This document shows, piece after piece, positions 31,389 through 41,522 of a DNA stretch of 64,000 bases. Under the pieces are notes generated by a model. The model ran no database searches and was not told where the DNA came from. It worked only from the letters and a program-made list of their open reading frames with translations. The translations under genes were made by a program, and so were the position numbers. The DNA is from Trichosphaerium sp. ATCC 40318 (lineage: Eukaryota > Protista > Tubulinea), in the NCBI GenBank assembly GCA_038496445.1, contig JALMLS010000466.1, forward strand, positions 806,001 to 870,000, given 5' to 3'. Position 1 is the stretch's first letter; each line of letters opens with the position of its first letter.

Positions 31389-32660
31389 TTACAACCAATC
31401 ATAACTTGAGTTTGTTTCATTACAATCAAAATGAACCAACCACTTAGACAAAGCGAAAGGAAAACACCCAACAACCTTATCAAGTCTTGTATCAATGTGA
31501 GAGCACCATCGTAAAGGACCCCTTCCACCAGAAAGCTGAACACTCCAGGTATATTGCTCATTCCACGGATCTGATAATCCAACAACGCTCATAACTTTGA
31601 AACTACCACTGCTGAAAACAAGCTTCATGGCATCAATTTGAAGTGTTCCAGGTTTACACTTTTTACTAAAAAAAGGCTCTTCAGGCATTCTAATGTCTAC
31701 TATTTTCACGTGATCAACAGATGCTCCTCCAATAATGTTATCTATCAATGTGGTCACTTTTGATAGATCTGGAACTGTGATTACTTCTTTAGGCCCTGAT
31801 CTTGCATCCCATATTTTTGTTATACTTCGGTCTGAAGATAGTACAAGATTTCCACATACTGACGTACGTACTTGACATACAGCAGAGTTATGGCCCGAGA
31901 ATTGAGTTGTTATTTTTGATGTTGGTATATCGTATATCTTTACATTGTTGAGATTGGAGTATGATGTAGCACCATGCACAATTCCAAAGTGAAGAGATTT
32001 GCCTCCAATGCCAAAGGCAAGAGATTTATCAGTAACAAAACACATTCCTATTAAATCACACTTTGTATCCAACTCTGTAAAACATGATACTTTACCATCG
32101 CCATTCCATGTAATGATACCCTCTCCAGTACCTCCAACTATGACATCTTTTTGAATAGCACAAGTACTTACCTTTCCTGAACTAACTTTTTGATGTTCAA
32201 AATGAGTTGTAGAACCTTTTTCTTGAAACATCAAAAAACCACTGTTCTGATGTACACCGCAAATGAAGATCCTGTCTTTGTTGTTTGGATCCATCTTCAA
32301 CTCAGAGATTAAACCTCTACCCTCCCTGAAGCGTATAATCTCTTGGTGTTGTTTAGGATTGTTAACAAAAAAGCTGTTTTTTGCTGAAACTGTTGTTTTC
32401 ATGGCTTCTTTCCATGATTCTGGATCTGACGCTCTTCTATTACCATTTTTATACACCCAGTATGGCATTGGGAATGTTTTGGCGTAAATCTTAGTCCAAA
32501 TAAAGTTTGAGCTACAAATAATGTTCATACGCTCACAAGTAGTTGATAACGCCAAAATATCTTTGTATGAAATGTTAGAGAGTATTCCAACACAAATTTC
32601 GTTGGGTAGACTCCAAAAACGACAGGCGTTGTTCTTAGACGTTAATTTTGTACGTTTCAT
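31389..32660 (-). CDS. Intronless F-box/WD40 protein
   Basis: F-box FWSLPNEICVGILSNISYKDILALSTTCERM...IW; WD repeat FSGHNSAVCQV...SSDRSITKIWDAR; first Met at 32660. Confidence 0.85.
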   Translation of the reverse strand: MKRTKLTSKNNACRFWSLPNEICVGILSNISYKDILALSTTCERMNIICSSNFIWTKIYAKTFPMPYWVYKNGNRRASDPESWKEAMKTTVSAKNSFFVNNPKQHQEIIRFREGRGLISELKMDPNNKDRIFICGVHQNSGFLMFQEKGSTTHFEHQKVSSGKVSTCAIQKDVIVGGTGEGIITWNGDGKVSCFTELDTKCDLIGMCFVTDKSLAFGIGGKSLHFGIVHGATSYSNLNNVKIYDIPTSKITTQFSGHNSAVCQVRTSVCGNLVLSSDRSITKIWDARSGPKEVITVPDLSKVTTLIDNIIGGASVDHVKIVDIRMPEEPFFSKKCKPGTLQIDAMKLVFSSGSFKVMSVVGLSDPWNEQYTWSVQLSGGRGPLRWCSHIDTRLDKVVGCFPFALSKWLVHFDCNETNSSYDWL

Positions 32661-33103
32661 TTGATGATTTATAACTCGGCTGTTAACGTGCAAAAGTTGT
32701 TTTACTCACTTAATACAAAGTGATTTAAGTTCTCTTTAAACAATCAACACAGACACTTTTGCAATCATGGTGTGGCATGTTATGGAGATGGTATCCTCTT
32801 CAATGTGCTATAGAGTGATGTTATAGGTACCAAAATGTACTGGTGTCTTGTTGTAATATGAGTTACATATTAATTGAAACTGGCCAAAGAGCTACACTCT
32901 GAGAGGCTAGAATTACTAAGACATGAATACACTTATTAATAAAAAAACAACAAGAGTCAGTTAAATAAATGTGTTGTTTAGGTTTTTTTTTATCTAACAA
33001 TCTTTTACAGCAGATTACTTTTTGTTTTGTTTTACAGTTGCACGTGCATGAGAGTACTCTTTTTTTTTTTTTTTTTCTTGTTTGTTATTTTTCTTTACTT
33101 TGT

Positions 33104-36127: not shown

Positions 36128-36408
36128 GTTAATGCAGACAATCAAGAAAGCTTTTTCCTGACTTAGTTTTGACCTTGAAAGAAAAAACCACTGAATGTCC
36201 TCCAATAAGGCTCAACGTACGGAAACTAGCTACACGAACTACCTTAAGCTTCAAATACAGTTGTAGATCCGAAAAATAAAAAGATATTGTTTTATGACGT
36301 GGCACGTGTGAGAAAAACCGTTACAGTAGTGGTAATATTTAAGAAAAAGATGGTGTTGTTGTTTTCCATTTATTTACAATGTTGATAAAAATTAAATGTG
36401 GCAAGAGG

Positions 36409-38679
36409 TTATTGGGTAGATTCGATACTAGGTTCTTCAAGAGTAGTCATGTATGTATCGAATGCAGTAATTTGAGTACTTCCTCTTGTTCCTAAAGCCA
36501 GTTATTCTTTACTTTTTTGCGGCGGAGATTGCTTTCATTATCTTACCTCCCATGATAGATTGTAGTTCCTTTTTCTTCTCCTCTTCCTTCTCACGAGCAG
36601 ATCTTATACCGCTCTCTTGAATTGTGATAACTAGATACGCCATAATCGTCATACCTACAAAGAAGGTGGTGAATAACAACGAAGCTGCTTTTTTTGCTTT
36701 TATTGGATAAAGGATGTAAACGAAAGGTGTACCTATTGCTGCGTATACGACAACAATAAACCGAGCTCCTCCACTATCGGCAGTTAGATCACCAAAACCG
36801 ATTGTTGTCAAAGTGCCAGCAGTGAAGTACATGGCATCCACGAAATTCCTGATCAGATTGTTAGTTTCTGAATCCACAATCTTTCCCAGGTGTACCATTT
36901 TTCAAGTGCTGAGAAAATACCACTGCCAATTAGGAACAGCACAAGTGCCATTGCAAATGCAATACTCAATTGTATATAAATTGGTAGTGAGGTGTACTTT
37001 TCAAGTACCCAACGGAAGCAACGACGCCTAGATTACATTCAAATATATCAATGTTGAATTTCTCTTTTCATACTTCTCTGGTTGATAATCAAAATTGTGC
37101 TCCTTCTTCTCTCGTTCTCGAGATGATATACGTTGTACAACGTAAAGCATATAAAACTTAAAGGCAAGTATAGAAAGCACAAAAATAACCAAATAAAGTT
37201 TTGCTCCATTTTCTGTTTTAGAATTCATTGTAAGCTTCATTGAATCTTAGTTTACGCACTTGAAGGTACAACGTCGCCATAACCAATTGTTGTTACAGTT
37301 ACACAAACAAAGTAAAGGGCCTAACAAACATATGATTAGTGATCATTAAAGAGAACCAGGAGATGGTGAGCATACCTCGCCGAAACTCCAATCATCCACA
37401 ATTAAGAAAATAATAAGAGAAAAAATACAAAACACCGCTGCTGCACCCATAGATACTAAAAAACCAGCACGATCACCGGATAAAAAACGCTTTGCGCGCT
37501 TATAGAAACCGGACGACAATGGAAGTGCACCTTGCTGAGCCAATACTTTACCTAAAAATCCGAAATAGTAAGCCAACAAAAACTATCAAAAATTCGGTCA
37601 CCTTGTTGAGTTGCGATTTGTGAAATGACACATAACGTCACTACCTTAACACCGAGACACCAAATCACAACGAATATTAATAGAACCTGGCCACCTTTTG
37701 AACCGGGTTCAAAGTCACCATAACCTTTGAAACGTCAGAACATGTCATGTAAAAACATTTGTTTTGAAAGCCATTAGCACCTGTATTTGAAATTACCGCG
37801 GCAGCAAAGTAAATTGAGTTAATGAAATTCCACTTTTCTATTAGCCCAAATGTTAATGCTATGAAGCAAAATGTAATCAAAAATGTCGAAATACACCAAA
37901 ACAACTAAATTAAGAGTCAATATTGTTGAACACAATGGACGTCCTCAAATGACGCCAATGAGCGCACACTATTTCCAATAAAATCAGTCCAATGACCACT
38001 TTGAGGTATCCTATTGTTCATGAGTATTTGTCTCTCTTCTTCAGATTCTTGCATCCTACACAGACACATTTAAAACACTATAGTTTATGGATATAATAAG
38101 AAATAAGCACAAGAACTAACCTTTTTGCCCTTGCAGCGTATGCACGTGCAACAATACTTAGCATATAAGCTAATGCACCTAGTGTGAAGAATGCAAAGAA
38201 AATAAGTAACACTCTACCAGCCACAGTAATAGGAAGACTCGAATTAAGTCGTCCATAACCTAAAACTATACTTCAACAAAAACAACAAAAAAAAAACTTG
38301 AAAGTCTGTTTTTTTTCTGACACGTGAAGTATAAATTCGAGAATTAAACTAAATTGGTTTTGAAACGAACCCACTGTTGTTACAACCATAGTCGAGAAGT
38401 AAAAGCCTAACATGTGCATGTCAATGACATAAAATGCCAATAATTCGTAAAAAGCCGTGTTTCAAGCCTCCTTTACCTTGTAGCGCGGACCAGCGCTCAA
38501 TACCACAAAATATACCGACACCAGCAGCCCATGTTAGTACAATACATCCTATCGCAATTGCCAGACGTAGGGCCTCACTCCTAAGCTTAAACCAATGCAA
38601 GCGCTTAGCGCCCTTTCAAAAATGTGAGTATTTACAACAAGAACGCGCTTACAAAGTCAAGAGGATAACTAGATGACAT
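36409..38679 (-). CDS. Potassium channel with four pore domains in one chain (8TM/4P), ~500 aa, 13 introns
   Basis: Manual GT-AG splicing gives one open frame with four TM-W..F..YF-filter-TM modules: TTVGYG, SNTGYG, TTIGYG, TTIGFG. Confidence 0.85.
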
Positions 38680-38911
38680 GCTATCACCAAACCATGAGGC
38701 TTAGAAGGCAAAAAAGAGGCAGTCAAGAAAAGTAAGTGTCATTTTCGAAAATTCTTGATTTTTCCAAGGTGGAAGCTTTCTTTTTACTTAATTACTATGA
38801 CAAACGCTCGTTATTACAAGTCTTGTCGCTATAACAGCTTTCTTTTTTTTTTGAGAAATGCGACTTTTTGTTTTGTGTAAGTTGTTTTTAGCGTTAATAC
38901 TACGCCTAAGC

Positions 38912-41522
<2,611 letters not shown>

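What the first reader, a model, noticed from the sequence alone, without database searches (positions are those of the whole stretch)
36409..38679. Single-chain four-pore-domain (8TM/4P) potassium channel
Seen in sequence: splicing 13 canonical introns gives one uninterrupted ~500-aa frame with four TM-P-TM modules. The filters are TTVGYG (~38380-38253, split by an intron), SNTGYG (~37790-37718, split), TTIGYG (~37294-37277) and TTIGFG (~36809-36791). The linker between modules 2 and 3 lies in one stop-free exon (~37376-37582), which argues against two adjacent K2P genes. P1 and P2 have a phase-1 intron in the same filter Gly codon, consistent with internal duplication. Established: K+ pores need four P-loops, supplied by tetramers (1P) or dimers (K2P, TPK, TOK: 2P); the 4x MPM Trk/Ktr/HKT/KdpA transporters lack full GYG filters. 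Inference: this is a monomeric, fully asymmetric K+ channel with no K2P extracellular cap, and the deviant SNTGYG loop may tune selectivity or gating. I do not know a characterised family with this architecture.
Basis: partly seen in the sequence, partly recalled or inferred. Interest (0 to 1): 0.9.

Follow-up and report, generated by a model that had tools for sequence, protein, structure and literature searches.

The report
Single-chain four-pore potassium channel gene
A protist (reportedly a marine amoeba) transcribes and splices a gene for a small protein that carries all four pore loops of a potassium channel on one chain. I found no paper describing this layout, although uncharacterised relatives exist in several other protist groups.

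Summary
On the minus strand, 38679..36409, 14 exons joined by 13 GT-AG introns give one open frame with four 2TM-pore modules (filters TTVGYG, SNTGYG, TTIGYG, TTIGFG).

Spliced cDNA contigs from three public studies confirm every intron. One contig runs from the P2 filter through P3 and P4 to the 3' UTR, which rules out two adjacent K2P genes.

The gene is not unique. A collinear 38%-identical relative (P0037) and 28-31%-identical relatives in Cochliopodium (Amoebozoa) and two euglenids share the four modules position by position. Dinoflagellates and other proteins acquired four modules by separate doublings of a two-pore unit.

An AlphaFold2 model of P0037 (pTM 0.77) superposes over all four modules on the pore domains of single-chain CaV/NaV channels (Z 14-17). 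This fits a pseudo-fourfold pore formed by one chain. There is no K2P cap.

Eight full-text searches found no paper on a natural 8TM/4P K+ channel. Single-chain K+ channels are known, however: CNGK has four 6TM repeats.

Verdict: a real, expressed, uncharacterised variant of tandem-pore K+ channels. Conduction, selectivity and stoichiometry are untested. The scan has not reported this on other DNA.

The parts
36409..38679 (-). Coding span of the gene (ATG 38679..38677, TAA ending at 36409). It has 14 exons, 13 GT-AG introns of 40-111 nt, and encodes 495 aa.
   Evidence: cDNA contigs reach from 36353 (3' UTR) to at least 38686 (5' UTR).
38653..38679 (-). Exon 1 (aa 1-9, MSSSYPLDF).
   Evidence: Intron 1 joint seen in run X1. 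The YP.DFG motif across the junction is shared with P0037.
38477..38612 (-). Exon 2 (aa 10-54): cytosolic N-terminus and M1.
38371..38406 (-). Exon 3: pore helix 1 and the first half of filter P1 (TTV + first base of Gly67).
   Evidence: Joints 38405/38476 and 38256/38368 in X1, X3 and X4.
38121..38259 (-). Exon 4: the rest of P1 (GYGR) and M2.
   Evidence: Pfam Ion_trans_2 gives a weak hit on this exon alone.
37968..38055 (-). Exon 5: cytosolic linker between modules 1 and 2. The donor is corrected to 37968|37967.
   Evidence: Joint 37904/37968 in X1, X3 and X4.
37781..37904 (-). Exon 6: M3, pore helix 2 and the first half of filter P2 (SNT + first base of Gly184).
37602..37724 (-). Exon 7: the rest of P2 (GYGD) and M4. 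The boundary is corrected by RNA.
   Evidence: Joint 37549/37600 (cut +2) in X3 and X4.
37376..37551 (-). Exon 8: cytosolic linker between modules 2 and 3, and M5.
   Evidence: X4 record 12 and X3 record 10 cross it in frame.
37260..37320 (-). Exon 9: pore helix 3 and filter P3 (TTIGYG at 37293..37276).
37074..37212 (-). Exon 10: M6 and the start of the linker between modules 3 and 4.
36896..37027 (-). Exon 11: linker and M7.
36733..36848 (-). Exon 12: pore helix 4, filter P4 (TTIGFG at 36808..36791) and the start of M8.
   Evidence: Pfam Ion_trans_2 E 1.3e-10 on this exon alone.
36547..36654 (-). Exon 13: the rest of M8 and a charged cytosolic tail.
36409..36491 (-). Exon 14: C-terminal tail and stop codon.
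   Evidence: Joint 36490/36546 in all four runs.
38157..38217 (-). Alternative 61-nt GT-AG intron inside exon 4. It would delete part of M2 and shift the frame. Seen in one run only.
   Evidence: Joint 38156/38218 in X4 only; X1 and X3 keep exon 4 whole.

Best explanation
This is an expressed nuclear gene of a protist, said by an earlier scan note to be a marine amoeba. It encodes a 495-aa membrane protein made of four consecutive, non-identical K+-channel pore modules (M-P-M x4, 8TM/4P). Both termini and all three inter-module linkers are cytosolic.

Inferred mechanism: one chain folds so that its four P-loops surround a single central axis and form a pseudo-fourfold selectivity filter, as the four subunits of KcsA or the two subunits of a K2P channel do. 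The protein then acts as a small leak-type K+ channel. It has no voltage-sensor, RCK, CNBD or EF-hand domain and no extracellular cap. Any regulation would have to go through the short basic cytosolic linkers and the charged C-tail.

Shown here: the gene, its splicing, the four modules, and homologues that share the four modules position by position. Inferred: monomeric assembly (from a predicted structure of a 38%-identical homologue), K+ selectivity (from three canonical filters plus SNTGYG), and leak-type gating.
For: Gene and transcript. All 13 introns appear as GT-AG joints in spliced contigs from 3 studies. X4 record 12 (1050 nt) runs from the 3' UTR through P4 and P3 to the P2 filter. 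X3 record 11 (566 nt) runs from M4 through P2 and P1 to M1. They overlap by 139 spliced nt. The frame is open for 495 aa.

Selection. 7 of 10 variants between the window and the cDNA contigs are synonymous, including all 5 in the TM/P core.

Domains. A local 2TM-P profile hits four times at E 1e-21 to 1e-27. Pfam Ion_trans_2 hits exon 12 at 1.3e-10. The four modules are only 20-27% identical to each other, so the duplication is old.

Topology. There are eight hydrophobic segments. K+R count is 33 in the predicted inside loops against 6 outside.

Homologues. P0037 is 38% identical and collinear (E 7e-88) and has 4 PF07885 stretches. In a careful ML tree of 80 modules, each module position of the window protein, P0037, Cochliopodium, Entosiphon and Ploeotia forms one clade in 90-98% of bootstrap trees.

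Fold. The AF2 model of P0037 has pTM 0.77 and pLDDT above 90 in the TM/P parts. Its residues 30-474 align sequentially with the four pore domains of CaV3.3, CaV1.1 and NaV1.7 (Z 16-17, 366-407 residues, rmsd 4.7-6.5 A). Half of it aligns with TWIK-1 (Z 15.8).

A hinge Gly is at the same column of M2, M4 and M8.
Against: No function was measured. The structure was predicted for a homologue, not for the window's own protein, because a spliced protein cannot be handed to the tools by reference. The alignment behind the model was shallow (21 sequences), and I could not inspect coordinates for filter geometry.

No single contig spans all four P-loops.

P2 has Asn where the S4-site Thr normally sits, and Thr in place of Val/Ile. 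P1 is followed by Arg instead of Asp. M4 and M6 carry a Lys two residues after the hinge position. Any of these could lower selectivity or conduction.

A minor frameshifting splice form exists.
Confidence: 0.7

Rival explanations
1. The four-module chain is real but does not work as a monomer. Chains pair or swap modules (for example two chains forming two pores, or a pore built from modules of different chains), or they need a partner subunit.
For: K2P and TOK relatives work as dimers. Some K2P structures are domain-swapped, which Foldseek's large rmsd values on K2P chains recall. AF2 was run on a monomer only, so it could not show an alternative assembly.
Against: The monomer model already closes into the CaV/NaV-like four-domain ring with pTM 0.77. 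Linkers of 25-40 residues are long enough for neighbouring placement. Positional conservation of each module over long evolutionary distances is what a fixed place in one ring predicts.
Confidence: 0.12
2. It forms a pore that is not K+-selective, either a non-selective cation channel or one with shifting selectivity, or it is a poorly conducting regulatory protein. The cause would be the deviant loops.
For: P2 reads SNTGYG and P1 reads GYGR. Relatives show further deviations at fixed positions: module 3 is TTIAYG or TTVAYG in P0037 and Entosiphon, and module 1 lacks the Asp after GYG in all five clade members. From general knowledge, a Thr before GYG in TWIK-1 P1 is linked to altered selectivity. 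A C. elegans K2P with constitutive Na+ permeability is listed (PMC11513965, title and abstract only).
Against: All four loops keep G-Y/F-G, and three keep the full T-T-[VI]-G-[YF]-G signature. Non-Asp residues after P1 GYG are usual in functional K2P channels (general knowledge). Core variants are all synonymous, so the sequence is under constraint.
Confidence: 0.15
3. The locus holds two adjacent K2P-type genes (P1-P2 and P3-P4) that were wrongly merged by hand splicing.
For: The two halves align with each other (26.7% over 180 aa, E 2e-17). Merged gene models of neighbouring tandem-pore genes probably occur in databases, for example a 4-module pineapple 'Two pore potassium channel c, partial'.
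Against: X4 record 12 and X3 record 10 cross the M4-M5 linker and intron 7 in frame. No contig end, poly(A) or start clusters there (tables 5, 6 and 8). P0037 and four other homologues are collinear across the same junction.
Confidence: 0.02
4. It is a Trk/Ktr/HKT-type cation transporter, the known single-chain 4x M-P-M family, rather than a K+ channel.
For: The topology is the same, four M-P-M units in one chain. KtrB, TrkH and HKT appear among the Foldseek matches over 467-547 columns.
Against: Those matches have TM 0.22-0.28 and rmsd 21-23 A, and VIA-align aligns only half of the model with KtrB at Z 11. Pfam gives Ion_trans_2 and no TrkH family hit. All four loops carry full G-Y/F-G filters instead of the single Gly of Trk/HKT. 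The nearest solved sequences are K2P channels (E 1e-14).
Confidence: 0.01

Closest known systems
K2P / TPK tandem-pore K+ channels (KCNK, 4TM/2P, dimers)
   Same: They share the Pfam pore module (Ion_trans_2). K2P chains are the nearest solved sequences (TREK-1 E 1.3e-14) and the best half-length structural match (TWIK-1 Z 15.8). Other shared traits are non-identical P-loops in one chain, a non-Asp residue after the first GYG, and the absence of a voltage sensor.
   Different: This protein has four modules per chain instead of two. It has no extracellular cap, because the M1-to-pore-helix loop is only a few residues. It is predicted to need no partner. It also lacks the EF-hands and 14-3-3 site of plant TPK.
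CNGK and four-domain NaV/CaV/NALCN channels (24TM/4P single chains)
   Same: One polypeptide supplies all four pore loops. CNGK is K+-selective (PMC7576140, PMC4749565). The model's four modules superpose in order on the CaV/NaV pore domains.
   Different: Each repeat here is a bare 2TM pore module, with no S1-S4 voltage sensor and no CNBD. At 495 aa it is about a quarter of the size. By sequence the modules belong with K2P-like 2TM units, not 6TM channels.
Trk/Ktr/HKT/KdpA superfamily (4x M-P-M in one chain)
   Same: The topology is identical (8TM, 4 P-loops, one chain, pseudo-fourfold pore).
   Different: Trk/HKT filters keep a single Gly (or Ser) per loop and belong to Pfam TrkH. Here all loops are full TxGYG-type Ion_trans_2 modules. 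Structural matches are weak.
Fungal TOK1 (8TM/2P)
   Same: It also has eight transmembrane helices in one chain and tandem Ion_trans_2 pores. It matches by sequence (E 2.6e-10).
   Different: TOK has only two P-loops after four extra N-terminal helices, and it dimerises.
Uncharacterised four-module proteins in public sets
   Same: These include P0037 (environmental transcript), Cochliopodium minus EP01091_P014298, Entosiphon and Ploeotia transcripts, Durusdinium and Polarella 'Potassium channel domain-containing protein', and Thecamonas XP_013755670.1. All have four PF07885 modules in one chain. The first five share module-by-module orthology with the window protein.
   Different: Euglenid members carry a FYVE finger between modules 3 and 4. 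The dinoflagellate proteins, P0017 and P0048 arose by separate doublings of a 2P unit. None has a published function that I could find.

Membership tests
K+ channel pore-module superfamily (Pfam PF07885 Ion_trans_2) | Significant match to the 2TM-P profile | tested here: met
   Exon 12 alone scores E 1.3e-10. A local module profile hits four times at 1e-21 to 1e-27. The homologue P0037 has 4 stretches at E 1.6e-49.
K+ channel pore-module superfamily (Pfam PF07885 Ion_trans_2) | T-x-G-Y/F-G signature after a pore helix, between two TM helices | tested here: met
   The filters are TTVGYG, SNTGYG, TTIGYG and TTIGFG, each between two hydrophobic segments. P2 deviates at two positions.
K+ channel pore-module superfamily (Pfam PF07885 Ion_trans_2) | K+-selective conduction | not testable with these tools
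   This needs electrophysiology or yeast complementation.
K2P (KCNK) / plant TPK | Two pore modules per subunit (4TM/2P), with the channel formed by a dimer | tested here: not met
   There are four modules in one open frame and one transcript.
K2P (KCNK) / plant TPK | Extracellular cap helices in the M1-P1 loop (animal K2P) | tested here: not met
   M1 ends at ..IERW and the pore helix starts about five residues later. The AF2 model of the homologue has a 3-residue loop between H19-59 and H63-74.
Trk/Ktr/HKT transporters | Four M-P-M units in one chain | tested here: met
Trk/Ktr/HKT transporters | Reduced filter (a single Gly per loop) and a TrkH-family sequence | tested here: not met
   All four loops have full GYG/GFG. 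Pfam gives Ion_trans_2 and no TrkH hit.
CNGK / four-domain voltage-gated-like channels | Four pore-forming repeats in a single polypeptide arranged round one pore | tested here: inconclusive
   Four repeats in one chain are shown. The ring arrangement is seen only in a predicted model of a 38%-identical homologue.
CNGK / four-domain voltage-gated-like channels | Each repeat has 6TM with an S1-S4 sensor (plus a CNBD in CNGK) | tested here: not met
   There are only eight hydrophobic segments in 495 aa and no other Pfam domain.

The most novel reading that the evidence does not exclude
8TM/4P proteins are working monomeric K+ channels, the smallest complete single-chain K+ pore. They form an undescribed class that arose several times in protists by doubling of two-pore units. 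In the amoeba-euglenid lineage the four places in the ring have been fixed and individually specialised since before those groups diverged: no Asp after GYG in module 1, and altered filters in modules 2 or 3.
Probability: 0.55. Interest if true: 0.72.

Novelty: new variant of a known kind. Interest (0 to 1): 0.62.

Why it matters
Textbook and recent accounts list K+ channel architectures as tetramers of one-pore subunits or dimers of two-pore subunits; a 2026 paper on the origin of tandem pores does so too (PMC13715775). The only natural single-chain case is the large CNGK.

A natural 495-aa chain with four different pore loops would complete the series 1P x4, 2P x2, 4P x1. It would show that the doubling which produced K2P channels happened again, and more than once.

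It would also give biophysicists a native, genetically fixed, fully asymmetric selectivity filter. Each of the four loops could then be mutated separately without engineered concatemers. Its small size and lack of accessory domains make it a convenient target for structure determination and for studying how filter asymmetry sets selectivity and gating.

Tried and rejected
1. My first hand model (500 aa) used a 36-nt intron 5 and a 62-nt intron 7. The cDNA joints replaced both.

2. Pfam on single exons gave only weak hits, except for exon 12, because the filters are split by introns.

I therefore searched with exon 12 and used the best full-length hit, P0037, as proxy.

4. The window's own protein is absent from the 1.84-billion representative library (no near-identical hit). 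A neighbouring 434-aa ORF finds nothing in the 5.8-billion set, so the organism could not be named independently.

5. The word-indexed homologue searches with P0037 and with a clade alignment returned few hits, mostly two-pore.

6. ESM Atlas searches by features and by shape found only two-pore-size clusters. This says only that no cluster of 50 or more members has the full four-module fold.

7. Foldseek alone gave misleadingly poor full-length matches. VIA-align was needed.

8. Eight literature searches with varied wording (four pore domains, four-pore, K4P, four P-loops, pseudotetrameric, 2TM repeats, dinoflagellate or amoeba K+ channels) found no description of a natural 8TM/4P K+ channel. 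Subscription journals and TCDB/InterPro architecture tables were not searchable.

9. A scan of the whole window found no second K+ filter gene.

10. The top-scoring library hit, P0001, is a 2788-aa Bacteroidales surface protein with 10 short repeated matches. I set it aside as a repeat artefact.
Full report
**Observation.** I read window 36200..38900 on the minus strand and translated it in three frames. Splicing by hand gave 14 exons, 13 GT-AG introns and one open frame of 500 aa with four hydrophobic-P-hydrophobic units.
- TTVGYG at 38380..38252
- SNTGYG at 37790..37717
- TTIGYG at 37293..37276
- TTIGFG at 36808..36791

The first two filters are each interrupted by a phase-1 intron in the codon of the first Gly of GYG.

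**Transcripts.** The look-up of sequencing runs returned four holders from three studies. Their contigs, laid on 36300..38800, carry GT-AG joints at all 13 introns, so they derive from spliced RNA. Eleven joints match my model exactly and two correct it:
- Intron 5 is 37967..37905 (63 nt).
- Intron 7 is 37601..37552 (50 nt). Exon 7 therefore extends to 37602 and exon 8 is 37551..37376.

The corrected frame is 495 aa and open throughout.

The contig coverage is as follows:
- X4 record 12 (1050 nt) runs from the 3' UTR (36357) through P4, P3 and the module 2-3 linker to 37837, beyond the P2 filter.
- X3 record 10 also crosses the linker.
- X3 record 11 (566 nt) runs from 37643 to 38573 and covers P2 and P1.
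- X1 confirms intron 1 and reaches 38686.

X3 record 11 and X4 record 12 come from one sample and overlap by 139 spliced nt. No single contig holds all four loops. The specific rival of two K2P genes split between P2 and P3 is excluded. A contig of the upstream gene ends near 38755, so the channel gene is a separate unit.

A 61-nt alternative intron inside exon 4 (38217..38157) occurs in one run only and would shift the frame.

Of ten single-base differences between the window and the contigs, seven are synonymous. These include all five in the TM/P core. The three replacements lie in a linker and the C-tail.

**Anatomy.** The approximate layout is:

| Module | Outer helix | Filter | Inner helix |
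|---|---|---|---|
| 1 | M1 24-46 | P1 TTVGYG 64-69 | M2 80-103 |
| 2 | M3 143-163 | P2 SNTGYG 181-186 | M4 196-219 |
| 3 | M5 255-279 | P3 TTIGYG 293-298 | M6 308-328 |
| 4 | M7 366-389 | P4 TTIGFG 408-413 | M8 422-443 |

- Loops predicted to be cytosolic hold 33 Lys+Arg, against 6 in the outer loops. This fits N-in, C-in and P-loops facing out.
- The outer helix runs almost directly into the pore helix, so there is no room for a K2P cap.
- The four modules are 20-27% identical to each other (blastp E 1e-9 to 1e-13), and the two halves align at E 2e-17. The internal duplication is therefore old.
- A Gly sits at the same inner-helix column in M2, M4 and M8.
- No other domain was found. Pfam on exon pieces gave Ion_trans_2 at 1.3e-10 for exon 12 and weak Ion_trans_2 hits for exons 4, 6 and 7.
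- A local module profile hits the protein four times at 1e-21 to 1e-27.

**Relatives.** A spliced protein cannot be passed by reference, so I searched 1.84 billion representatives with exon 12. There were 682 hits and none was near-identical, so this protein is not in the library.

Local phmmer with the full 495-aa model against the best 150 hits put P0037 first (489 aa, environmental JGI contig, E 7e-88). It is 38% identical and collinear from the N-terminal YP.DFG motif to M8. The next hits, at 28-31% identity, are:
- Cochliopodium minus (Amoebozoa) P0007/P0157
- the euglenids Entosiphon sulcatum (P0127) and Ploeotia vitrea (P0002)

Pfam gives four Ion_trans_2 stretches for each of these. 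The euglenid proteins also carry a FYVE finger between modules 3 and 4.

Of about 165 proteins collected, 41 have four modules, and many are compact at 380-600 aa. They include Durusdinium trenchii and Polarella glacialis (UniRef 'Potassium channel domain-containing protein'), MMETSP transcripts, and two Thecamonas trahens proteins.

**Module tree.** I built a careful ML tree of 80 modules (96 columns, so many deep forks are unresolved). It shows three things.
- For the window protein, P0037, Cochliopodium, Entosiphon and Ploeotia, each module position forms one group in 90-98% of bootstrap trees. The four-module chain therefore predates their divergence.
- In the dinoflagellate group, modules 1+3 (98/90) and 2+4 (98/92) are sister sets. 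This is the pattern expected from doubling a two-pore unit, and the group is separated from the amoeba-euglenid group by a supported branch (96/86).
- P0017 and P0048 show very recent 1~3 and 2~4 pairs (100/99-100).

The architecture has therefore arisen several times.

Position-specific traits agree with this. Module 1 lacks the Asp after GYG in all five members of the amoeba-euglenid group (R, K, G, F, G), while modules 2-4 keep it. Module 3 reads AYG in two members.

**Fold.** AlphaFold2 on P0037, with an alignment of 21 four-module proteins, gave mean pLDDT 76 and pTM 0.77, with values above 90 in the helices and P-loops.
- Foldseek listed K2P chains covering half the model, and KtrB/HKT/TrkH with poor superposition.
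- VIA-align gave as best matches the single-chain four-domain channels CaV3.3, CaV1.1 and NaV1.7. These align 366-407 residues across model 30-474 or further, in order, on their four pore domains (Z 16-17, rmsd 4.7-6.5 A).
- TWIK-1 aligns with half the model (Z 15.8, 198 residues, 3.9 A).

One chain is thus predicted to close into the usual four-fold pore ring. By sequence the nearest solved proteins are K2P channels (TREK-1 1.3e-14), then TOK1 and NaK. No solved chain has four such modules. ESM Atlas searches found only two-pore-size clusters among clusters of 50 or more members.

**Mechanism.** The gene is real, spliced, expressed and under constraint, and it encodes four K+-type pore modules in one chain. 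These points are shown. Three further points are inferred:
- The chain forms a monomeric pseudo-tetrameric pore. The only support is the predicted structure of a homologue.
- The pore conducts K+. Three filters are canonical. P2 has Asn at the S4-site Thr position and Thr for Val, and P1 is followed by Arg.
- The channel behaves as a background channel, because no sensor domain is present.

The basic linkers contain R-x-x-S motifs (KRFLS, QRISS) that could be kinase sites. This is speculation.

The rivals considered are another stoichiometry (0.12), a non-selective or non-conducting pore (0.15), two merged genes (0.02) and a Trk/HKT-type transporter (0.01).

**Comparison and novelty.** The protein works most like a K2P channel whose two subunits have been fused. 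It fails the defining K2P features of two pores per subunit and a cap. It shares topology but not filter type or family with Trk/Ktr/HKT. It shares the one-chain principle with CNGK and NaV/CaV but lacks their 6TM repeats (PMC7576140, PMC4749565).

Eight full-text searches found no paper describing a natural 8TM/4P K+ channel. Both a 2005 survey of microbial K+ channels and a 2026 paper on the origin of tandem pores list only one- and two-pore subunits (PMC2234077; PMC13715775).

I rate it a new variant of a known kind: undescribed in the searchable literature, but already visible as unnamed proteins in public sets and not confined to this genome.

**Limits.**
- The organism is given only by an earlier scan note (marine amoeba, s1-390498), which I could not verify.

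Noticed in passing
window 38157-38217 (-): An alternative 61-nt GT-AG intron lies inside exon 4 and is present in run X4 only. It removes part of M2 and shifts the frame, so it is probably a non-productive isoform.
   Followed up: partly
window 38684-38695 (-): A short upstream ORF (ATG GTT TGG TGA) lies 16 nt before the start codon. cDNA contigs reach only to 38686, so it is unclear whether it is within the 5' UTR.
   Followed up: no
window 38755-39319 (-): The upstream neighbour on the same strand ends with a protein-kinase-like C-terminus (ORF 39038..39319). It is covered by a 1604-nt cDNA contig with high depth (104) in run X2, which ends near 38755, about 70 nt before the channel gene's known 5' end.
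   Followed up: no
P0127 residues 358-422; P0002 residues 343-404: The euglenid four-pore homologues carry a FYVE zinc finger (E 1e-19 to 1e-21) in the cytosolic linker between modules 3 and 4. This suggests PI3P or endosomal targeting or regulation in that branch.
   Followed up: partly
P0037 residues ~303-310; P0127 module 3: The third filter reads TTIAYG or TTVAYG (first Gly replaced by Ala) in two relatives. Module 1 lacks the Asp after GYG in all five members of the clade. Both are position-specific filter asymmetries.
   Followed up: partly
P0046 (Ananas comosus OAY68892.1); P0015 and P0050 (Thecamonas trahens): These annotated genome proteins have four pore modules. The pineapple one, named 'Two pore potassium channel c, partial', may be a merged model of two neighbouring TPK genes. 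The Thecamonas ones (809-823 aa) have long linkers, and one is named in UniRef as a C2 domain-containing protein.
   Followed up: no
P0001 (MHC1732989.1, Bacteroidales MAG, 2788 aa): This was the best-scoring library hit to the 38-aa P4 exon. It is a 'Cys-Gln thioester bond-forming surface protein' with 10 short repeated matches, most likely a repeat or composition artefact rather than a channel.
   Followed up: no
window 31392-32693 (-): A 434-aa single-exon ORF with an F-box and a WD40-like stretch finds no relative at E<=1e-20 among 5.8 billion proteins. The genome's proteins appear to be absent from the collection.
   Followed up: partly
L001 1664-2179 (+): The environmental contig that carries P0037 has a second ORF of 172 aa only 110 nt downstream on the same strand. 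It has no Pfam match. The channel gene there is intronless, so the contig is probably a transcript or comes from an intron-poor relative.
   Followed up: partly
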